A stretch of 5,405 bases of DNA, from positions 1 to 5,405 of IMG/VR virus record IMGVR_UViG_3300022693_000541; one strand, 5' to 3'. The translations under genes and the position numbers were made by a program. This document shows, one piece after another, positions 3 through 5,309 of the stretch (position 1 is the stretch's first letter; each line of letters starts with the position of its first letter). Below the pieces are notes generated by a model. The model did not search any database and was not told where the DNA came from. It saw nothing but the letters and a program-made list of their open reading frames with translations.

Positions 3-326
3 GATACTAATGCTGTATCTACTTATGTTGATGGAGCGTCTGGATTGAATTACGAATGGTCGGGAACTGCCAATGCTTCTACTTCTAGAAAGCGTCCTGC
101 CATGTCTGTTATACGTGGTATACAGATTAAGAATGAATCCGGTACCAGTGCTGAAATTGTGTATGTAGCTTTTGATACAATTGCGTCCTCTAGTACGGGA
201 ATACCTGTATTGGCGGGAGCCACATATGAATCTAATTTTCCTGTAGACTTTAGGGATAATGTCTCAGTAGTATCTGCCTCTGGAACTCCTACTGTTAGCG
301 GGGTCATCTGGGGAGTCCATAGCTAA
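3..326 (+). CDS. 5'-truncated probable virion/structural protein (C-terminal part)
   Basis: The frame is open from position 3 (DTNAVSTYVDGASGLNYEWSGTANASTS...), so the TTG at 45 is probably not the true start. YVDG-x6-W-x-GT-x3-STS resembles a motif recurrent in phage minor tail/virion proteins (recalled, not searched). The C-terminus is beta-rich (IQIKN...VYVAFD...GIPVLAG). Stop TAA 324-326 overlaps the next ATG (TAATG). Confidence 0.6.
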   Translation, partial: DTNAVSTYVDGASGLNYEWSGTANASTSRKRPAMSVIRGIQIKNESGTSAEIVYVAFDTIASSSTGIPVLAGATYESNFPVDFRDNVSVVSASGTPTVSGVIWGVHS

Positions 327-1825
327 TGACTACATCCACTATTAAGACGGGTATAGGAGACATCCCCAGTCCTTCAAATTGGGTACACAATACTGAGATG
401 TATCAGACTGTTGGTATTGATGCTACCATACTTCCCATTGAAAAGCAAGATAGTGGTAAGGTTTCTTTAGAAGATATTTCTGATGCCCTTGATGAATATA
501 AACGATTATTTAAAGCGGGAATAGCTTCTAAAGCTGAAATTATTACATTGTCTAGAGCTTATCCAGACTCTACTTTGTACTCTAAAGCTGTCTCTAAACT
601 TAGTGAGGGAGATCCTATGATTTTAGGTGGCCCCGCCTCTGTAGAATTAATTGATAGAGAAGGGCATCTAATCACTACAGTTGCTTTAGAAAAAGCTTTC
701 AAGAAATACATGAATAATTTTCGTACCAGGAATACAATGGTACTACATTCTGATGTTCAAGTTGGATGGGCCTTACCTGCATATATTTCTAAGGGTGGAC
801 AGATATTTAAGTCTGGTGTAGGAGCGGAGGGACTTTTCTTCATTACGGAATTGCGGGATGATACCAAAATTGCCCAACGGGTTATGGATCAAGTTAATGA
901 AGGGAAGCTAAGGAGTTATTCCATTGCGGGAAGTGCAACTAAAACTCAGAATATGCAGAAAGGTTTACAACCTTATATGCAAGTAGACGAAATGGAACTA
1001 GCAGAAGTTACAGTTTGTGAGAAGGGGGTAAACCAAAGTGCTGGGTTTGACATTCTAAAAGCAGAGGGAGCAGTAACTACTTGTATTGATGGTAGTTGCC
1101 TTATGCAGAAACAGGAATGTAATGGTAGTTGCCTTCTCCAGAAAGAAGAAGGTAAAATTACTCAGCTAGACTCAGGCTATAGAAATGCTACGGATGTTGA
1201 AATGCAAAATGGGATTATGTGTGGTACCTGTAAGTTCTTTAATAAACAGGAACAAACATGTGATATAATTGAAGGAATGATTGAAGACCACATGTACTGC
1301 AAAATTTTTGCACCTCTGGATGAATCTCCAACTATTGATGAAGGAAGGGAATTAACTATGTTAATGGAAAAAGCAGATGGGTCAATTGATTTTACTGGGT
1401 CTTTCTTGAACTGGATGAAGAAACAAGGCAAACCTTCCTCGCCAAAAGATATGGCTGGAACCTTTGCAACCCTATTGAATACTGCGGGAAGGGTATCAGA
1501 ACATCATCAATTACTACGGGAGTATGGATTTCCTTCTGAGCAACCTCAAGAAGCCATGCGGTACACTCCAGTAATAGAAACAGAAACAGATGACTTTGGA
1601 ATTCCCATTCATATGAAACCTCCGTGGACTGTTAATGAAGCGGGGTCACATCTGGGAAAGAAATTAGATGCTGATGCTCCTACTTACGATACTTCGTTAG
1701 CTGCTAAGGCTGAGAAGGATTTGCAAACAACTATGCATCCTTGGTATTCGTCAGAAATAAAGGTGGCTTTTCCTATTCGGAAATCGTTTACCAAATGGTT
1801 TCATGATAATGAGTTCTATCTATAA
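326..1825 (+). CDS. Phage prohead (capsid maturation) protease, HK97/peptidase S78-like, with Cys-rich and HiPIP-like C-terminal extensions
   Basis: Residues ~97-246 show the family motifs: ILGGPASVELIDREGHLI, MVLH141SD (His), GKLRSYS199IAG (Ser), ELAE227VTVCEKGVN and FDILKA. GGGGAG RBS at 310-315, TAATG coupling. Confidence 0.85.
   Translation: MTTSTIKTGIGDIPSPSNWVHNTEMYQTVGIDATILPIEKQDSGKVSLEDISDALDEYKRLFKAGIASKAEIITLSRAYPDSTLYSKAVSKLSEGDPMILGGPASVELIDREGHLITTVALEKAFKKYMNNFRTRNTMVLHSDVQVGWALPAYISKGGQIFKSGVGAEGLFFITELRDDTKIAQRVMDQVNEGKLRSYSIAGSATKTQNMQKGLQPYMQVDEMELAEVTVCEKGVNQSAGFDILKAEGAVTTCIDGSCLMQKQECNGSCLLQKEEGKITQLDSGYRNATDVEMQNGIMCGTCKFFNKQEQTCDIIEGMIEDHMYCKIFAPLDESPTIDEGRELTMLMEKADGSIDFTGSFLNWMKKQGKPSSPKDMAGTFATLLNTAGRVSEHHQLLREYGFPSEQPQEAMRYTPVIETETDDFGIPIHMKPPWTVNEAGSHLGKKLDADAPTYDTSLAAKAEKDLQTTMHPWYSSEIKVAFPIRKSFTKWFHDNEFYL
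1082..1150 (+). repeat. In-frame imperfect tandem duplication, 33-nt period, encoding C-(I)-D/N-GSCL-x-QK-x-E twice
   Basis: ATGGTAGTTGCCTT occurs identically at 1089-1102 and 1122-1135. The protein reads CIDGSCLMQKQE / CNGSCLLQKEE. Confidence 0.85.
1154..1315 (+). other. HiPIP-like (high-potential iron-sulfur protein) four-cysteine domain inside the prohead protease ORF
   Basis: Residues 277-330 read K-ITQLDSG-Y285...C299-GT-C302-KFF-x6-C312-DIIEGMI-x4-Y-C325-KIF. This matches the small-HiPIP pattern (upstream Tyr, CxxCxxF, C-x-x-V/I-x-G-x-I, aromatic-C-x-x-aromatic). Confidence 0.65.
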
Positions 1826-1916: not shown

Positions 1917-2111
1917 ATGATAAGTAGTATAATCTTTTTCGGTATTGCAGGACTTGTAATATGTTTAATGGCAATAGTTTATGATAGAGGTAAGTCGGGG
2001 CATTCTGTGGAGTATTACAGATATTTAGAGAATAATAAAGTTCCTCCCCCGTCAGATAAAGACGACAGAATAATTCTTTATAATAACTTATGGGGAGTTA
2101 GGAGAAAGTGA
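1917..2111 (+). CDS. Small membrane-anchored hypothetical protein (64 aa)
   Basis: N-terminal hydrophobic helix IIFFGIAGLVICLMAIVY. RBS and promoter lie upstream, and the stop overlaps the next GTG (GTGA). Confidence 0.75.
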   Translation: MISSIIFFGIAGLVICLMAIVYDRGKSGHSVEYYRYLENNKVPPPSDKDDRIILYNNLWGVRRK

Positions 2112-2260
2112 AGTCTTTGCGCCCACAAATTCTTGTATGTATAATTATCCTAGGTGCTATTGCCATATTTTCTTTGGAATTAGAACATACTGCAATTACT
2201 ACTGGCTGTATAACATTGTTAGGGGCACTGGGAATGAAAATATTGGAGTCGGAAAAGTGA
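2108..2260 (+). CDS. 50-aa two-helix membrane protein (holin-like topology), absent from the ORF track
   Basis: GTG start in a GTGA overlap, with GGGGAG/AGGAG upstream. Translation MKSLRPQILVCIIILGAIAIFSLELEHTAITTGCITLLGALGMKILESEK gives two hydrophobic segments and a charged C-terminus. It tiles exactly between its neighbours. Confidence 0.8.
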   Translation: MKSLRPQILVCIIILGAIAIFSLELEHTAITTGCITLLGALGMKILESEK

Positions 2261-2385
2261 AAAAAAGTTGGGTACGATGTCCAGGTTGTCAACGAAAGCA
2301 ACATGCTAAGACTACTAAATCTGGGACTATGTGTGCCCCTTGTGTTAAACAGGGCAAGACTACTCAGACAGGTAAATTTAGATAA
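2257..2385 (+). CDS. 42-aa basic zinc-finger peptide (CxxC-x14-CxxC)
   Basis: GTG in a GTGA overlap, GGAG at 2245-2248. MKKSWVRCPGCQRKQHAKTTKSGTMCAPCVKQGKTTQTGKFR is the 3' half of track ORF 2137..2385. Confidence 0.75.
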   Translation: MKKSWVRCPGCQRKQHAKTTKSGTMCAPCVKQGKTTQTGKFR

Positions 2386-2400
2386 CTAAGGAGTTCTATA

Positions 2401-2589
2401 ATGGCAGAATGTGTTTGTGATGTTAATGCCTATGCGCTACAAGGTATCTGTGAATGTGAAGGAGAGTGTCCATGTGAGTGTGAAGTATGTGAGTGTGAAC
2501 AGGTTAATCTGTGGTCTGTAGATTTAATCGAAGAATGTCCTTGTGGTGATGGACATTGTAGCTGTGGAAAAGCCCCCTATGAAACTTAA
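2401..2589 (+). CDS. Acidic cysteine-rich metallothionein-like protein (62 aa)
   Basis: 13 Cys, all in CxC/CxCxC motifs, 14 Asp/Glu, 1 Lys and 1 His. Strong RBS TAAGGAG at 2387-2393. Confidence 0.7.
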   Translation: MAECVCDVNAYALQGICECEGECPCECEVCECEQVNLWSVDLIEECPCGDGHCSCGKAPYET

Positions 2590-2896: not shown

Positions 2897-3086
2897 AAGA
2901 CTGGCCCAATTAATAATTAGATTAAAAGAAGTACTTCTTCATGTAGAAGAACGTCAAAAAGAAGCACATGGGAATGAAGCAGAGATAAAAGACTTACACG
3001 CAGAACTAGTTAGTTTAAAGAAAGACCAAGTAGATGCTATGAAAGCACTAGATGAACTAGAAGAGGTCATTAAAAAATGGGTATAG
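2889..3086 (+). CDS. Coiled-coil hypothetical protein (65 aa)
   Basis: The G-run RBS at 2875-2881 is 7 nt before ATG 2889. Heptad-like Leu/Ile pattern, rich in Glu/Lys. Confidence 0.75.
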   Translation: MLERLAQLIIRLKEVLLHVEERQKEAHGNEAEIKDLHAELVSLKKDQVDAMKALDELEEVIKKWV

Positions 3087-3544
3087 TTTATGATAAAATA
3101 GTTAAACTTAAACAGATGTGTACTCCTCCTGATTTAACTGAACCTTTGTTTGAAGCAAACACTGATTGGATAGGCCAAAAATTACGTGATGTAAATATTC
3201 TTAATACGGGAATGCATCATAAACCATTAGACAATAAATATTGGTGTTGCTCTCGATTGGATTTTGATGCTATAATCAAGTGGGATTGGACTGACAATAA
3301 AAAATATATAGCAGAAAAGTATGATTGTGATAATTTTGCCTTTAGTTTTAAAGCTAGAATGGATAGGAGATTTCATTTGAACAACGTGGGCTTGGTGATT
3401 GACTATTCGGGTGGACACGCTTATAATGTGATTGTTTTCTCTGACGGAACTGTGACATTGTTTGAGCCTCAATCAGATAGCTTCCCAATTTTAAATCCAG
3501 TAGCTGGATATTATAGATGTACATCGGGGTTTATAGTAATATGA
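3077..3544 (+). CDS. Papain/transglutaminase-like cysteine peptidase related to the C-terminal domain of Marasmius oreades agglutinin (lectin MOA-related / Agglutinin_C)
   Basis: Motifs D-x-x-Y (LDNKY), Y-x-x-E-x-YDC84DNFA, GGH114AYN and LFE130PQ reproduce the Cys-His-Glu triad arrangement of MOA. GAGGT RBS at 3063-3067. Confidence 0.8.
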   Translation: MGIVYDKIVKLKQMCTPPDLTEPLFEANTDWIGQKLRDVNILNTGMHHKPLDNKYWCCSRLDFDAIIKWDWTDNKKYIAEKYDCDNFAFSFKARMDRRFHLNNVGLVIDYSGGHAYNVIVFSDGTVTLFEPQSDSFPILNPVAGYYRCTSGFIVI

Positions 3545-4484: not shown

Positions 4485-5309
4485 ATGAGTTTATCACAGG
4501 CAGAAATTCATGAAAAGATTTTATATCCAGTTACTAAAGTGTTGGCAGGAAATGCAGGGGGAAGTGGGGTTTTAGTATACAGTAAAGAAGACCCCAATAA
4601 ACCAGGCGATTTTATTAATATTGCTTTAACTTGTCAACATGTTATTGATGGTGCTATTAAAGTCTCTGAACAATGGGATAACATTCTTAAGAAGGATGTA
4701 AAATCAGATGTGTTAGAGGAAGTTCGCATTGAAGTCTTTGACTACGATAAGAGTAAAGTAGTGTCGGCTAATTCGACAACGGCTCAAATCATTGCTTACG
4801 ATAAACATCATGACTTAGCCGCTGTTAAACTAAATAATACTAGACCTATGAGAAATGTAGCTACTGTTATACCTAAAGAACCAATAAAAGAACTCCAAGT
4901 AACTGATCCTGTATGGGTTTGTGGATGTTCTTTACTTCATGACCCTTTCCCAAGTCCAGGTAACCTAACATATCTACGTGAAATCATTGACCAGAAAGCA
5001 TACCTGATGCAGAATGCTCCTAGTATATTTGGGAACTCTGGTGGAGGTTTGTTTCACGGAGACACTGGACATCTACTGGGACTAACCTCTAGAATTACTT
5101 CTACCCAACTTGGATTTGGTATAGATATTATGACATGGATGGGATTCAGTACACATCCTGATAGATTATATGAGTTCTTTGAACATCAAGAACTACAGTT
5201 TCTATATGATGATACTGATAATTATTATGATGCTTTGCATCGTAGAGACAGTCGTAGGCATGAAGCTTTACGGAATCTATTGTTTGAATCTAAAGGGGAG
5301 AGTCCTTAG
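4485..5309 (+). CDS. Trypsin-like (clan PA, HtrA/Trypsin_2-type) serine protease without signal peptide or PDZ domain
   Basis: Motifs GSGV, ALTCQH52VI, HD110LAAVKL and GNS185GGGLF. AGGAGG RBS at 4472-4477. Confidence 0.9.
   Translation: MSLSQAEIHEKILYPVTKVLAGNAGGSGVLVYSKEDPNKPGDFINIALTCQHVIDGAIKVSEQWDNILKKDVKSDVLEEVRIEVFDYDKSKVVSANSTTAQIIAYDKHHDLAAVKLNNTRPMRNVATVIPKEPIKELQVTDPVWVCGCSLLHDPFPSPGNLTYLREIIDQKAYLMQNAPSIFGNSGGGLFHGDTGHLLGLTSRITSTQLGFGIDIMTWMGFSTHPDRLYEFFEHQELQFLYDDTDNYYDALHRRDSRRHEALRNLLFESKGESP

What the first reader, a model, noticed from the sequence alone, without database searches (positions are those of the whole stretch)
1154..1315. HiPIP-like iron-sulfur domain fused to a phage prohead protease
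Seen: a ~54-aa module with Y...CxxCxFF-x6-C-xx-I-x-G-x-I-x4-YC-xx-F follows the protease domain. Established: HiPIPs are small periplasmic, Tat-exported [4Fe-4S] electron carriers with this Cys spacing. Inference: here it has no export signal and is attached to a capsid-maturation enzyme. It may be packaged into the head as redox or iron cargo, may redox-gate maturation, or may be a repurposed Zn-binding fold.
Basis: partly seen in the sequence, partly recalled or inferred. Interest (0 to 1): 0.75.

Follow-up and report, generated by a model that had tools for sequence, protein, structure and literature searches.

The report
HiPIP-like domain inside viral capsid protease
A marine, probably archaeal, tailed virus carries inside its capsid-maturation protease a small four-cysteine domain related to bacterial high-potential iron-sulfur proteins, and similar domains are fused to several other phage capsid-protease families, so some virus heads may be built with an iron-sulfur cofactor that has not been described.

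Summary
ORF 326-1825 (499 aa) is a head-maturation protease, by Pfam S78, PHROG and 98 structural matches to viral prohead proteases. Its nearest isolates are haloarchaeal tailed viruses, and the context is magrovirus-like.

Residues 277-333 form a C-x2-C-x9-C-x12-C module. It is present in 90 of 119 homologues, and the four Cys are invariant. The window's module alone is sub-threshold for Pfam HIPIP (14.5 bits against a cut-off of 22). Five orthologous modules pass (23.9-32.2 bits). A profile of 26 modules hits PioC, a 54-aa HiPIP, at E 4e-6 over its whole length, and the next four PDB hits are also HiPIPs. AlphaFold/Foldseek gave no usable structural test.

The module is internal, with no export signal. 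It lies between the protease core and a strongly conserved C-terminal domain, and it was lost in two clades.

Related modules are also fused to canonical S78, XkdF-type, Mu-gpI-type and DUF2213 proteins in ordinary phage head modules, including Pontimonas phage phiPsal1, and to polyvalent-type proteins.

Most likely it is a HiPIP-derived, probably [4Fe-4S]-binding accessory domain carried into the procapsid. Metal identity and role are untested. I found no paper describing it.

The parts
326..1825 (+). Gene for the 499-aa head-maturation protease polyprotein: N-terminal helices, S78 protease core, Cys-containing linker, HiPIP-like module, conserved C-terminal domain
   Evidence: ORF list. Pfam S78 24.6 bits against cut-off 21. 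PHROG 23555 head maturation protease, E 3.8e-15. Foldseek against viral models gave 98 hits at E<=1e-3, almost all prohead proteases. 634 homologues.
617..1060 (+). Protease core (aa ~98-245), with invariant H141 and S197/S199/S203
   Evidence: Pfam and PHROG coordinates. tblastn to the HVTV-1/HCTV prohead proteases over aa 89-252, 31-34% identity. Invariant columns. AF2 beta-rich domain aa 98-231, pLDDT about 70-90.
1082..1102 (+). Conserved C-x-D-G-S-C-L motif (C253-L259) in the linker after the protease core
   Evidence: At least 90% conserved in 90-121 family members. Absent from the HVTV-1 protease. AF2 pLDDT below 50. Role unknown.
1115..1144 (+). Second, tandemly duplicated copy of the same motif (E-C-N-G-S-C-L-L-Q-K, aa 264-273)
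   Evidence: These alignment columns are gaps in about 70% of the family. The DNA repeat ggtagttgcctt is visible at 1091-1102 and 1124-1135.
1154..1324 (+). HiPIP-like module (aa 277-333) with predicted cluster ligands C299, C302, C312 and C325
   Evidence: Alignment A1. Pfam HIPIP: window 14.5 bits, orthologues 23.9-32.2 bits. PioC 6xyv at E 4e-6 by profile and 0.0034 by single sequence. pLDDT 77-84 in the full-length AF2 model.
1358..1660 (+). Conserved C-terminal domain (aa ~345-445; motifs E-H-H-x-L-L-x-E-x-G-F-P-S-E and P-P-W-x-V-N-E-A-G). Inferred to be the capsid-docking or scaffold-like part.
   Evidence: Many columns are at least 90% conserved. It is retained in members that lack the module. 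Partly helical in AF2. In long homologues it is followed or interrupted by about 600 aa of Gly/Arg-rich basic sequence. The function is inference.
3..326 (+). 3' end of the gene for a conserved ~307-aa protein that always lies directly upstream. Its stop overlaps the protease start (TAATG).
   Evidence: tblastn hits in 77 of the related loci. Gene order in L080, L081 and L083. No Pfam or PHROG match.

Best explanation
ORF 326-1825 encodes the head-maturation protease of a marine tailed virus. The virus is related to haloarchaeal siphoviruses and is probably a magrovirus-like virus of Poseidoniales.

Between the protease core and a conserved C-terminal domain lies a ~55-aa domain that descends from the minimal, PioC-type HiPIPs. 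I infer the following.
- It binds a [4Fe-4S] cluster through C299, C302, C312 and C325.
- The host's cytoplasmic Fe-S machinery loads the cluster. HiPIPs normally acquire their cluster in the cytoplasm before Tat export, so no export is needed.
- The domain enters the procapsid as part of the protease polyprotein.
- It does not act there as a diffusible electron carrier. It acts as a compact, cofactor-nucleated, oxidation-tolerant accessory domain of capsid-internal proteins: a folded spacer or docking unit between the protease and its capsid-binding tail. Its folding could also couple head assembly to the host's Fe-S and redox state.

What is shown: homology to HiPIP, conservation of the ligands, the internal position, loss in two clades, and recurrent fusion to other capsid proteases.

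What is inferred: the metal, presence in the procapsid, and the role.

My sub-confidences:
- HiPIP homology: 0.9
- [4Fe-4S] rather than Zn: 0.6
- Enters the procapsid: 0.7
- Mainly a structural or docking role: 0.35
For: - Protease identity and head-module context.
- HiPIP homology:
  - 14 of 26 orthologous modules hit Pfam HIPIP, and no other family recurs except PF18524 HPIP_like (4 of 26) and four families with two hits each.
  - Five modules pass the gathering score, covering profile positions 20-65 of 66.
  - The module profile matches PioC over residues 5-52 of 54 with all four Cys aligned, and the next four PDB hits are HiPIPs.
  - The window alone matches PioC at E 0.0034.
  - Of 94 small proteins found with the viral profile, 26 hit HIPIP (best 4.7e-9). 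Some carry twin-arginine signals.
- Residues: the four Cys, R284 and G317 are invariant. Aromatics are always present after Cys2, immediately before Cys4 (Y or W in 26 of 26) and at +3 after Cys4.
- Link to the capsid interior:
  - Related modules are fused to canonical S78 (P0261; phiPsal1 gp006), XkdF-type (P0152, P0182, P0191, P0231, P0234), Mu-gpI-type (P0174, P0188, P0266) and DUF2213 (P0150) proteins.
  - These lie between portal or MuF and the major capsid protein.
  - Modules also occur in proteins carrying domains typical of virion-packaged polyvalent proteins: 2H-SAK, InPase and a D12 methyltransferase (PMC5512222).
- Accessory nature: the presence or absence of the module needs only two changes on the family tree.
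Against:
- The window's own Pfam score (14.5 bits) is below the cut-off.
- The structural test failed. The isolated module folded at pLDDT 57, and Foldseek returned no HiPIP for either model.
- Loss of the module in two clades shows that the protease works without it.
- Some fused modules in other phages lack the Trp/Tyr before Cys4 (P0188, P0261). That weakens the case for a uniformly HiPIP-like cluster environment.
- Nothing shows that the domain survives maturation rather than being digested and expelled, as HK97 protease fragments are.
- A four-Cys site can also hold Zn.
Confidence: 0.5

Rival explanations
1. Zn knuckle of HiPIP ancestry. The domain keeps the HiPIP scaffold but binds a single Zn(II) (or forms no cluster), serving purely as a small structural fold in the linker.
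For: Four Cys in a 27-residue span can chelate Zn. Scattered weak hits of single modules to zinc-finger models (zf-MIZ, zf-primase, CP190 zinc finger) appear. The family tolerates replacement by a short C-x-C-x-C motif or by nothing. Virions in oxic seawater would keep Zn more easily than Fe-S.
Against: The only family hit repeatedly and significantly is HIPIP. The zinc-finger hits are single, at E 0.02-2. The spacing and the flanking aromatics that shield a cubane are conserved. Among Fe-S folds, HiPIP clusters are unusually oxygen-tolerant (established knowledge).
Confidence: 0.25
2. Redox or Fe-S-status gate. A bound [4Fe-4S] cluster senses oxidation or cluster availability. Through the flexible linker it controls when the protease is activated or released inside the procapsid.
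For: The module sits next to the protease, separated by a disordered, Cys-containing linker (C253/C258, pLDDT below 50). HiPIP-like accessory subunits do regulate an enzyme in benzylsuccinate synthase (PMC12590467, found). The module is repeatedly fused specifically to maturation proteases.
Against: Its position relative to the protease is not fixed. It is C-terminal here, N-terminal and often distant in the S78, XkdF and Mu-gpI fusions. That argues against a precise allosteric coupling. Clades without the module have an otherwise near-identical protease.
Confidence: 0.12
3. Packaged cargo. After maturation the cluster-bearing fragment stays in the head, alone or with the basic C-terminal region. 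It is then either delivered to the next host with the DNA, or it protects or organises the packaged genome. The particles would therefore carry iron.
For: Modules occur in polyvalent-type proteins that are predicted to be packaged and injected (PMC5512222). Long homologues append about 600 aa of Arg/Gly-rich basic sequence suited to DNA contact. Ferritin/Dps-domain proteins are among the structural matches to this protease in the viral library. Fe-S clusters do occur in virions, for example lambda gpL (Tam et al. 2013, cited in PMC13255074).
Against: There are no proteomic data. In the best-studied systems the protease and its fragments leave the head (established knowledge for HK97). The window protein has no effector-type enzyme domain.
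Confidence: 0.1
4. A chance cysteine pattern or non-functional linker sequence.
For: The window's single-sequence Pfam hit is weak (E 0.044).
Against: The ligands are invariant across 26 divergent modules. There are 927 profile hits at E<=1e-3 in 1.84 billion proteins. Orthologues exceed the Pfam cut-off.
Confidence: 0.02

Closest known systems
PioC and other minimal HiPIPs (PDB 6xyv, 3h31, 1isu, 2hip, 1pih; Pfam PF01355)
   Same: The size is about 54 aa. The ligand spacing is C-x2-C-x8/9-C-x12-C. Aromatics flank Cys2 and Cys4. The profile match runs over the whole length, and all four ligand Cys align.
   Different: It has no twin-arginine signal and is not a free periplasmic carrier. It is an internal domain of a 499-aa viral polyprotein. 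The window's own score is below Pfam's cut-off. The host is probably an archaeon. Cluster binding and potential are unmeasured.
HK97-type (S78) prohead proteases, especially those of haloarchaeal viruses HVTV-1, HCTV-1 and HCTV-5, and of magroviruses
   Same: The protease core is homologous, at 31-34% identity over aa 89-252. The gene lies in the head module with an HK97-fold major capsid protein and a portal. The polypeptide is long.
   Different: The HVTV-1 protease (637 aa) has no Cys module. It has an acidic low-complexity tail instead. Here the gene lies downstream of the capsid gene rather than upstream of it.
Protease-scaffold fusion polyproteins (P2 gpO, lambda C/Nu3, herpesvirus UL26). 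From general knowledge, not tested here.
   Same: A maturation protease sits at one end and a long capsid-interior region at the other, joined by a flexible linker.
   Different: No cofactor-binding domain is known in those linkers. The scaffold function of aa 345-499 is only inferred.
Virion Fe-S protein lambda gpL (tail tip, [4Fe-4S]; Tam et al. 2013, cited in PMC13255074 and PMC10721106)
   Same: It is a precedent for a structural virion protein coordinating an Fe-S cluster of unknown function.
   Different: It is a tail-tip protein, not a head protein. Its fold is not HiPIP-type and it is not fused to a protease.
HiPIP-like accessory subunits of benzylsuccinate synthase (Pfam PF18524 HPIP_like)
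   Same: A HiPIP-type fold is used as a non-carrier accessory module of an enzyme. 4 of 26 viral modules give weak hits (best E 0.0024).
   Different: Those are separate subunits of an anaerobic glycyl-radical enzyme. The hits are far below that family's cut-off of 28.1 bits.
Polyvalent proteins of phages (Iyer et al. 2017, PMC5512222)
   Same: Several other module-bearing proteins found here have that architecture: effector-type domains plus a C-terminal assemblin-like or XkdF peptidase. They are predicted to be packaged in heads.
   Different: The window protein has its protease at the N-terminal side and no effector enzyme domain. The paper does not mention a HiPIP-like domain.

Membership tests
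HiPIP (Pfam PF01355) | Four Cys ligands spaced C-x2-C-x(8-16)-C-x(12-13)-C | tested here: met
   C299-x2-C302-x9-C312-x12-C325 in the window. Invariant in 26 modules. Present in 90 of 119 family members.
HiPIP (Pfam PF01355) | Window sequence itself reaches the family's curated score | tested here: not met
   14.5 bits, E 0.044-0.045, against a gathering score of 22.
HiPIP (Pfam PF01355) | Orthologous modules at the same position of the same protein family reach the curated score | tested here: met
   L019 32.2, L026 28.4, L029 27.7, L022 26.9 and L027 23.9 bits, covering profile positions about 20-65 of 66. P0044 and P0048 carry precomputed PF01355 hits.
HiPIP (Pfam PF01355) | Sequence match to solved HiPIPs with the ligand Cys aligned | tested here: met
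   Module profile against PDB: PioC E 4.1e-6 (residues 5-52 of 54), then 3h31, 1isu, 2hip and 1pih. Window alone: PioC E 0.0034.
HiPIP (Pfam PF01355) | Aromatic residues packing around the cluster | tested here: met
   [FYH][FY] follows Cys2 in all 26 modules, Y or W lies immediately before Cys4 in 26 of 26, and F or Y lies at +3 after Cys4. Equivalence to particular HiPIP positions was judged by alignment only.
HiPIP (Pfam PF01355) | HiPIP three-dimensional fold | tested here: inconclusive
   AF2 of the module alone gave pLDDT 57, and Foldseek against PDB found nothing. In the full-length model the module has pLDDT 77-84, but the whole-model Foldseek search gave no significant PDB hit and the domain could not be cut out.
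HiPIP (Pfam PF01355) | Tat signal peptide; free periplasmic electron carrier | tested here: not met
   The module begins at residue 277 of a 499-aa protein, and nothing resembling a signal precedes it. Some free-standing relatives do have RRxFL signals.
HiPIP (Pfam PF01355) | Binds [4Fe-4S] cycling 3+/2+ at high potential | not testable with these tools
   Requires expression, metal analysis, EPR and electrochemistry.
Caudovirus prohead serine protease (S78, PF04586) | Match to the family profile and fold | tested here: met
   24.6 bits against cut-off 21. PHROG 23555 at E 3.8e-15. 98 Foldseek hits at E<=1e-3 in the viral library, nearly all prohead proteases.
Caudovirus prohead serine protease (S78, PF04586) | Catalytic His and Ser | tested here: inconclusive
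   H141 and S197/S199/S203 are invariant in 90 sequences. They were not mapped residue by residue onto a characterised protease.
Caudovirus prohead serine protease (S78, PF04586) | Encoded in the head-morphogenesis module | tested here: met
   Portal, then further genes, then an SU10-type major capsid protein, three small genes, and the protease, in L080, L081 and L083.
Magroviruses / archaeal tailed viruses | Capsid protein and protease similar only to haloarchaeal siphoviruses, at about 30% identity | tested here: met
   tblastn of the protease and of the neighbouring capsid protein against 50,697 phage records hits only Haloarcula viruses plus one Methanofastidiosa virus. This is the pattern described in PMC5434244. 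The second-best structural match is a 500-aa protease of an 'uncultured archaeal virus'.
Magroviruses / archaeal tailed viruses | Genome of about 100 kb with an archaeal-type replication module | not tested
   Homologues sit on contigs of up to 96.8 kb. Replication genes were not examined, and the window itself is a 5.4-kb contig.
Phage polyvalent proteins (PMC5512222) | Several effector-type domains with a C-terminal assemblin-like peptidase | tested here: not met
   The window protein has its protease at the N-terminal side and no enzymatic effector domain. Other module-bearing proteins (P0191, P0231, P0261, P0157) do fit.

The most novel reading that the evidence does not exclude
HiPIP-type [4Fe-4S] domains are a widespread, unrecognised class of capsid-interior cofactor modules. 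They have been recruited repeatedly by maturation proteases of at least four families, and by packaged polyvalent proteins, in archaeal viruses and phages. On this reading many procapsids, and perhaps mature virions, contain tens to hundreds of Fe-S clusters. These would tie head maturation to host Fe-S and redox status, or would be delivered to the next host. In abundant marine viruses they would be a real iron cost, and their loss in some clades may reflect iron scarcity.
Probability: 0.3. Interest if true: 0.8.

Novelty: new variant of a known kind. Interest (0 to 1): 0.65.

Why it matters
Prohead proteases are regarded as cofactor-free serine proteases with a capsid-targeting tail. A conserved Fe-S-type domain built into them, recurring across S78, XkdF, Mu-gpI and DUF2213 proteins, would add a redox or metal dimension to capsid assembly.

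It would also extend the HiPIP family. HiPIPs are thought of as Tat-exported bacterial electron carriers. This one would work in the cytoplasm and the capsid interior, in viruses of archaea.

The claim is directly testable with a 55-residue domain.

For ocean biogeochemistry, an iron cofactor in an abundant virus group infecting Poseidoniales bears on how much iron is tied up in viral particles.

Practically, the module is currently unannotated in these genes, including in the deposited phage phiPsal1, whose gene is annotated only as 'prohead protease'.

Tried and rejected
- Megablast of the whole window against 50,697 phage genomes found no match.
- AF2 of the isolated module with a 26-sequence alignment gave pLDDT 57. 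Foldseek against PDB gave only noise at E>2.
- Foldseek of the full-length model against PDB gave nothing significant. The EBV protease appeared at rank 22 with E 0.48, and MlaD hits are spurious. The domain could not be excised from the model, and no prediction jobs remained.
- Rooting the family tree with the HVTV-1 protease failed. The outgroup branch is saturated (length 10), so one gain followed by two losses is consistent with the tree but not proven.
- tblastn of a free-standing 61-aa relative (P0149) against phage genomes found no match.
- Literature searches for HiPIP with prohead protease, phage or capsid, and inside the magrovirus, polyvalent-protein and viral Fe-S review papers, found no prior description.
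- An encapsulin-type compartment was considered and rejected, because portal and terminase-type head modules are present.
- A generic zinc ribbon was considered and rejected, because no zinc-finger family recurs among the modules.
- PHROGs gave only weak links to phrog_5016, a family of unknown function.
Full report
WHAT IS THERE

The window is a complete 5,405-bp IMG/VR contig, IMGVR_UViG_3300022693_000541. Its GC content is 34-41%. Nothing in 50,697 phage genomes is close to it at the DNA level.

ORF 326-1825 (+) encodes 499 aa. Three lines of evidence say it is a head-maturation protease:
- Pfam Peptidase_S78 matches aa 167-243 at 24.6 bits against a cut-off of 21, and XkdF-type S78_2 matches aa 107-207.
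- PHROG 23555, 'head maturation protease', matches at E 3.8e-15.
- The AlphaFold model of the full protein has 98 Foldseek matches at E<=1e-3 in the viral structure library, almost all prohead proteases.

By tblastn, the only isolates with a similar protease are Haloarcula tailed viruses (HVTV-1, HCTV-1, HCTV-5, HCTV-16), at 31-34% identity over aa 89-252. The neighbouring major capsid protein on longer homologous contigs hits the same haloviruses plus a Methanofastidiosa virus. That pattern matches the description of magroviruses of Marine Group II archaea (PMC5434244). The second-best structural match is a 500-aa protease from an 'uncultured archaeal virus'. Homologues lie on contigs of up to 96.8 kb, in the order portal ... 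capsid protein - three small genes - protease. I therefore treat the source as a magrovirus-like archaeal tailed virus. That assignment is probable, not proven.

THE OBSERVATION

The cysteines are at 299, 302, 312 and 325, spaced C-x2-C-x9-C-x12-C.

Of the 120 best homologues plus the window, 119 aligned well enough to score, and 90 of those carry the module. I aligned 26 modules taken from IMG/VR loci, which share only 29-46% identity with the window's outside its own subclade. In that alignment the four Cys, an Arg (R284) and a Gly (G317) are invariant. Aromatic residues are always present after Cys2, immediately before Cys4 (Y or W in every sequence) and three residues after Cys4.

IS IT HiPIP-LIKE?

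The window's module alone scores 14.5 bits (E 0.044) on Pfam HIPIP, below the cut-off of 22. The case rests on four further results.
- Fourteen of the 26 orthologous modules hit HIPIP. No other family recurs apart from HPIP_like (4 of 26) and four families with two hits each.
- Five modules exceed the curated cut-off, at 23.9-32.2 bits, and cover profile positions 20-65 of 66. Two database homologues already carry a precomputed PF01355 hit.
- A profile of the 26 modules, searched against all PDB sequences, finds PioC, the 54-residue HiPIP of Rhodopseudomonas palustris. The match is E 4.1e-6 over residues 5-52, with all four cysteines aligned. The next four hits are also HiPIPs.
- The window's module on its own also has PioC as its best PDB hit, at E 0.0034.

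The same profile, searched against 1.84 billion representative proteins, gives 927 hits at E<=1e-3. Of the 94 hits of 200 aa or fewer among the best 150, 26 hit Pfam HIPIP, the best at 4.7e-9, and no other family recurs. Some have RRxFL twin-arginine signals, as true periplasmic HiPIPs do.

Sequence homology to the HiPIP family is therefore well supported.

The structural test was not informative. The isolated module folded with pLDDT 57 and Foldseek returned noise. In the full-length model the module has pLDDT 77-84, but whole-model searches of the PDB gave nothing significant and the domain could not be excised.

ARCHITECTURE

The family alignment and the model show these regions:

| Residues | Feature |
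|---|---|
| 1-37 | Variable N-terminus |
| 49-91 | Three confident helices |
| ~98-245 | Protease core, with invariant H141 and S197/S199/S203 |
| 235-275 | Disordered linker |
| 277-333 | HiPIP-like module |
| ~345-445 | Strongly conserved C-terminal domain |

- The linker contains a nearly invariant C-x-D-G-S-C-L motif (C253-L259). In the window it also contains a tandem duplicate of that motif, which only about 30% of the family has.
- Members without the module keep both flanking regions. Many of them have a short C-x-C-x-C motif in its place, and others have no extra Cys.
- Long homologues of 1,000-1,300 aa add about 600 residues of Gly/Arg-rich basic sequence after or inside the C-terminal domain.
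- The HVTV-1 protease has no Cys module and has an acidic tail instead.

On a tree built from the flanking regions, presence or absence of the module needs only two changes. One is a 27-member clade without it, and the other is a nested pair without it. Rooting with HVTV-1 is unreliable because that branch is saturated. The data fit one early gain and two losses.

The module is thus an internal, conserved but dispensable domain of a protease polyprotein. It has no export signal.

THE WIDER PATTERN

Related modules are fused to other capsid-maturation proteins.
- P0261 has a HAD-type phosphatase region, then the module, then a canonical S78 protease (E 5.7e-41). Its gene lies between portal and an HK97-type capsid gene, next to a large terminase gene.
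- P0152, P0182, P0191, P0231 and P0234 combine the module with XkdF-type proteases. P0191 also has a D12 methyltransferase, and P0231 has a ChaB domain.
- P0174, P0188 and P0266 combine one to three modules with a Mu gpI-type domain. P0188 is encoded between MuF and an E-type capsid gene.
- P0150 has DUF2213 plus two modules.
- Other carriers have 2H-SAK plus InPase, PAP2, LMWPc, RNase H-like, GNAT or histidine-phosphatase domains. Several of these domains are typical of the virion-packaged 'polyvalent proteins' of Iyer et al. In those proteins assemblin-like peptidases sit at the C-terminus (PMC5512222). That paper does not mention a HiPIP-like domain.

Among deposited phage genomes, the only tblastn hit of the window's module (E 0.01) falls inside the annotated prohead protease of Pontimonas phage phiPsal1. 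That 484-aa protein has the module at aa ~58-115 (Pfam HIPIP 20 bits, E 8.7e-4) and a canonical S78 domain at aa 256-409 (E 3e-42). Its gene lies downstream of the portal gene and upstream of an HK97-type capsid gene.

Among the best 150 profile hits, 31 proteins longer than 200 aa lie outside the window's own family, and at least 10 of them carry a capsid-protease or scaffold-type domain. This repeated association is the strongest clue to function. Whatever the module does, it does it together with proteins that work inside the procapsid.

MECHANISM

*Best explanation*

Shown:
- Homology to HiPIP.
- Invariant ligands and shielding aromatics.
- An internal position between the protease and a conserved tail.
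- Dispensability in two clades.
- Recurrent fusion to capsid proteases.

Inferred from established knowledge:
- HiPIPs receive their cluster in the cytoplasm before Tat export, so a cytoplasmic viral domain can be loaded by the host machinery.
- Prohead proteases are co-assembled into procapsids through a non-catalytic tail, so the module should enter the procapsid.
- HiPIP clusters are buried and unusually oxygen-tolerant. That would suit a protein of particles assembled in aerobic surface-ocean hosts.

My best explanation is a HiPIP-derived domain, probably binding a [4Fe-4S] cluster. It would serve as a compact, cofactor-nucleated accessory or docking domain of the capsid-interior polyprotein, and not as a diffusible electron carrier.

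*Rivals*
- A Zn-only structural knuckle.
- A redox or Fe-S-status gate on maturation. The HiPIP-like regulatory subunits of benzylsuccinate synthase are a precedent (PMC12590467).
- Retained or injected cargo. The polyvalent-type carriers, the basic extensions, and the ferritin/Dps-domain proteins among the structural matches to the protease all point this way.

None of these can be separated without metal analysis and procapsid biochemistry.

COMPARISON WITH WHAT IS KNOWN, AND NOVELTY

As a fold family, this is a HiPIP relative. It fails the functional definition of the family, which is a Tat-exported free carrier, and the window's own sequence is sub-threshold.

As a protease, it is an ordinary S78-type enzyme of the halovirus and magrovirus lineage.

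Fe-S clusters in virion proteins are known for the lambda gpL tail-tip protein (Tam et al. 2013, cited in PMC13255074 and PMC10721106), but not for head proteases.

Full-text searches found no paper linking HiPIP with prohead proteases, capsids, magroviruses or polyvalent proteins. Automated Pfam tables already flag PF01355 on two homologues, so the raw domain hit is not hidden, but it appears undescribed.

I rate it a new variant of a known kind, with interest 0.65. The domain identification is solid and the recurrence across protease families is surprising. The metal and the role are still untested.

Noticed in passing
window 2401-2589 (+): A 62-aa ORF with 17 cysteines (runs of C-x-C, metallothionein-like), about 575 bp downstream of the protease gene. 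It is conserved at 50-69% identity in 15 related loci, so it is probably a real gene. It has no PHROG match. A second Cys-rich product next to a putative Fe-S protein may not be coincidental, since P0129 and P0188 also carry Cys-rich C-x-C stretches in the same polypeptide as a HiPIP-like module.
   Followed up: partly
window 1082-1102 and 1115-1144 (+): The C-x-D-G-S-C-L motif just after the protease core is at least 90% conserved in the marine family and absent from the HVTV-1 protease. The window carries a tandem duplicate of it. The clade that lost the HiPIP-like module often has an extra C-x-C-x-C a few residues downstream, so a second small metal or disulfide site may exist in the linker.
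   Followed up: partly
window 4485-5309 (+): A 274-aa trypsin-like serine protease (Pfam Trypsin_2 on homologues; PHROG 9683 'protease') is conserved in 22 related loci. It is a second protease a few kb from the head-maturation protease, and its role is unknown.
   Followed up: partly
window 3-326 (+): This is the 3' end of a ~307-aa gene that lies immediately upstream of the protease gene, with overlapping stop and start, in 77 related loci. It has no Pfam or PHROG match. It is probably a head component.
   Followed up: partly
window 2108-2260 (+) and 2137-2385 (+): A 50-aa hydrophobic ORF is conserved in 40 loci down to about 40% identity. In the overlapping 82-aa ORF in another frame, only the last ~35-40 residues are conserved in distant loci. 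That part holds a C-x2-C...C-x2-C pattern, which suggests a separate ~40-aa zinc-ribbon-like gene starting further downstream.
   Followed up: partly
window 3077-3544 (+): A 155-aa ORF whose homologue in L080 has a precomputed Pfam Lectin_C_term hit. It is conserved in 10 close loci and has no PHROG match.
   Followed up: no
L087 3330-4784 (Pontimonas phage phiPsal1, MG835450, gene 006): A deposited phage genome has a 484-aa 'prohead protease' made of a HiPIP-like module (aa ~58-115) plus a canonical S78 domain (aa 256-409). The module is not annotated. The phage itself is reported as lost.
   Followed up: yes
P0122-P0130, P0134, P0135 (homologues of the window protease, 1,000-1,300 aa): Long versions of the same protease carry about 600 aa of Gly/Arg-rich, strongly basic low-complexity sequence after or within the C-terminal domain. 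This suggests a DNA-contacting internal head protein made as part of the protease polyprotein.
   Followed up: partly
L082 8001-8546 and proteins P0151, P0153, P0154, P0156, P0159 and others: A family of ~170-185-aa proteins has two HiPIP-like modules in tandem and a conserved C-terminal D-I-E-D-L motif. The one context examined is a 91.5-kb contig with protein kinase, ankyrin, BTB and papain-like genes. That looks like a giant virus or a eukaryote rather than a phage.
   Followed up: partly
BFVD entries A0A6J5N5R9 and A0A6J5RFH1: Two proteins of uncultured phages named as ferritin/Dps-domain proteins (679 and 622 aa) are among the structural matches to this protease. This suggests that iron-storage domains are also fused to prohead proteases. 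Their sequences could not be fetched here.
   Followed up: no
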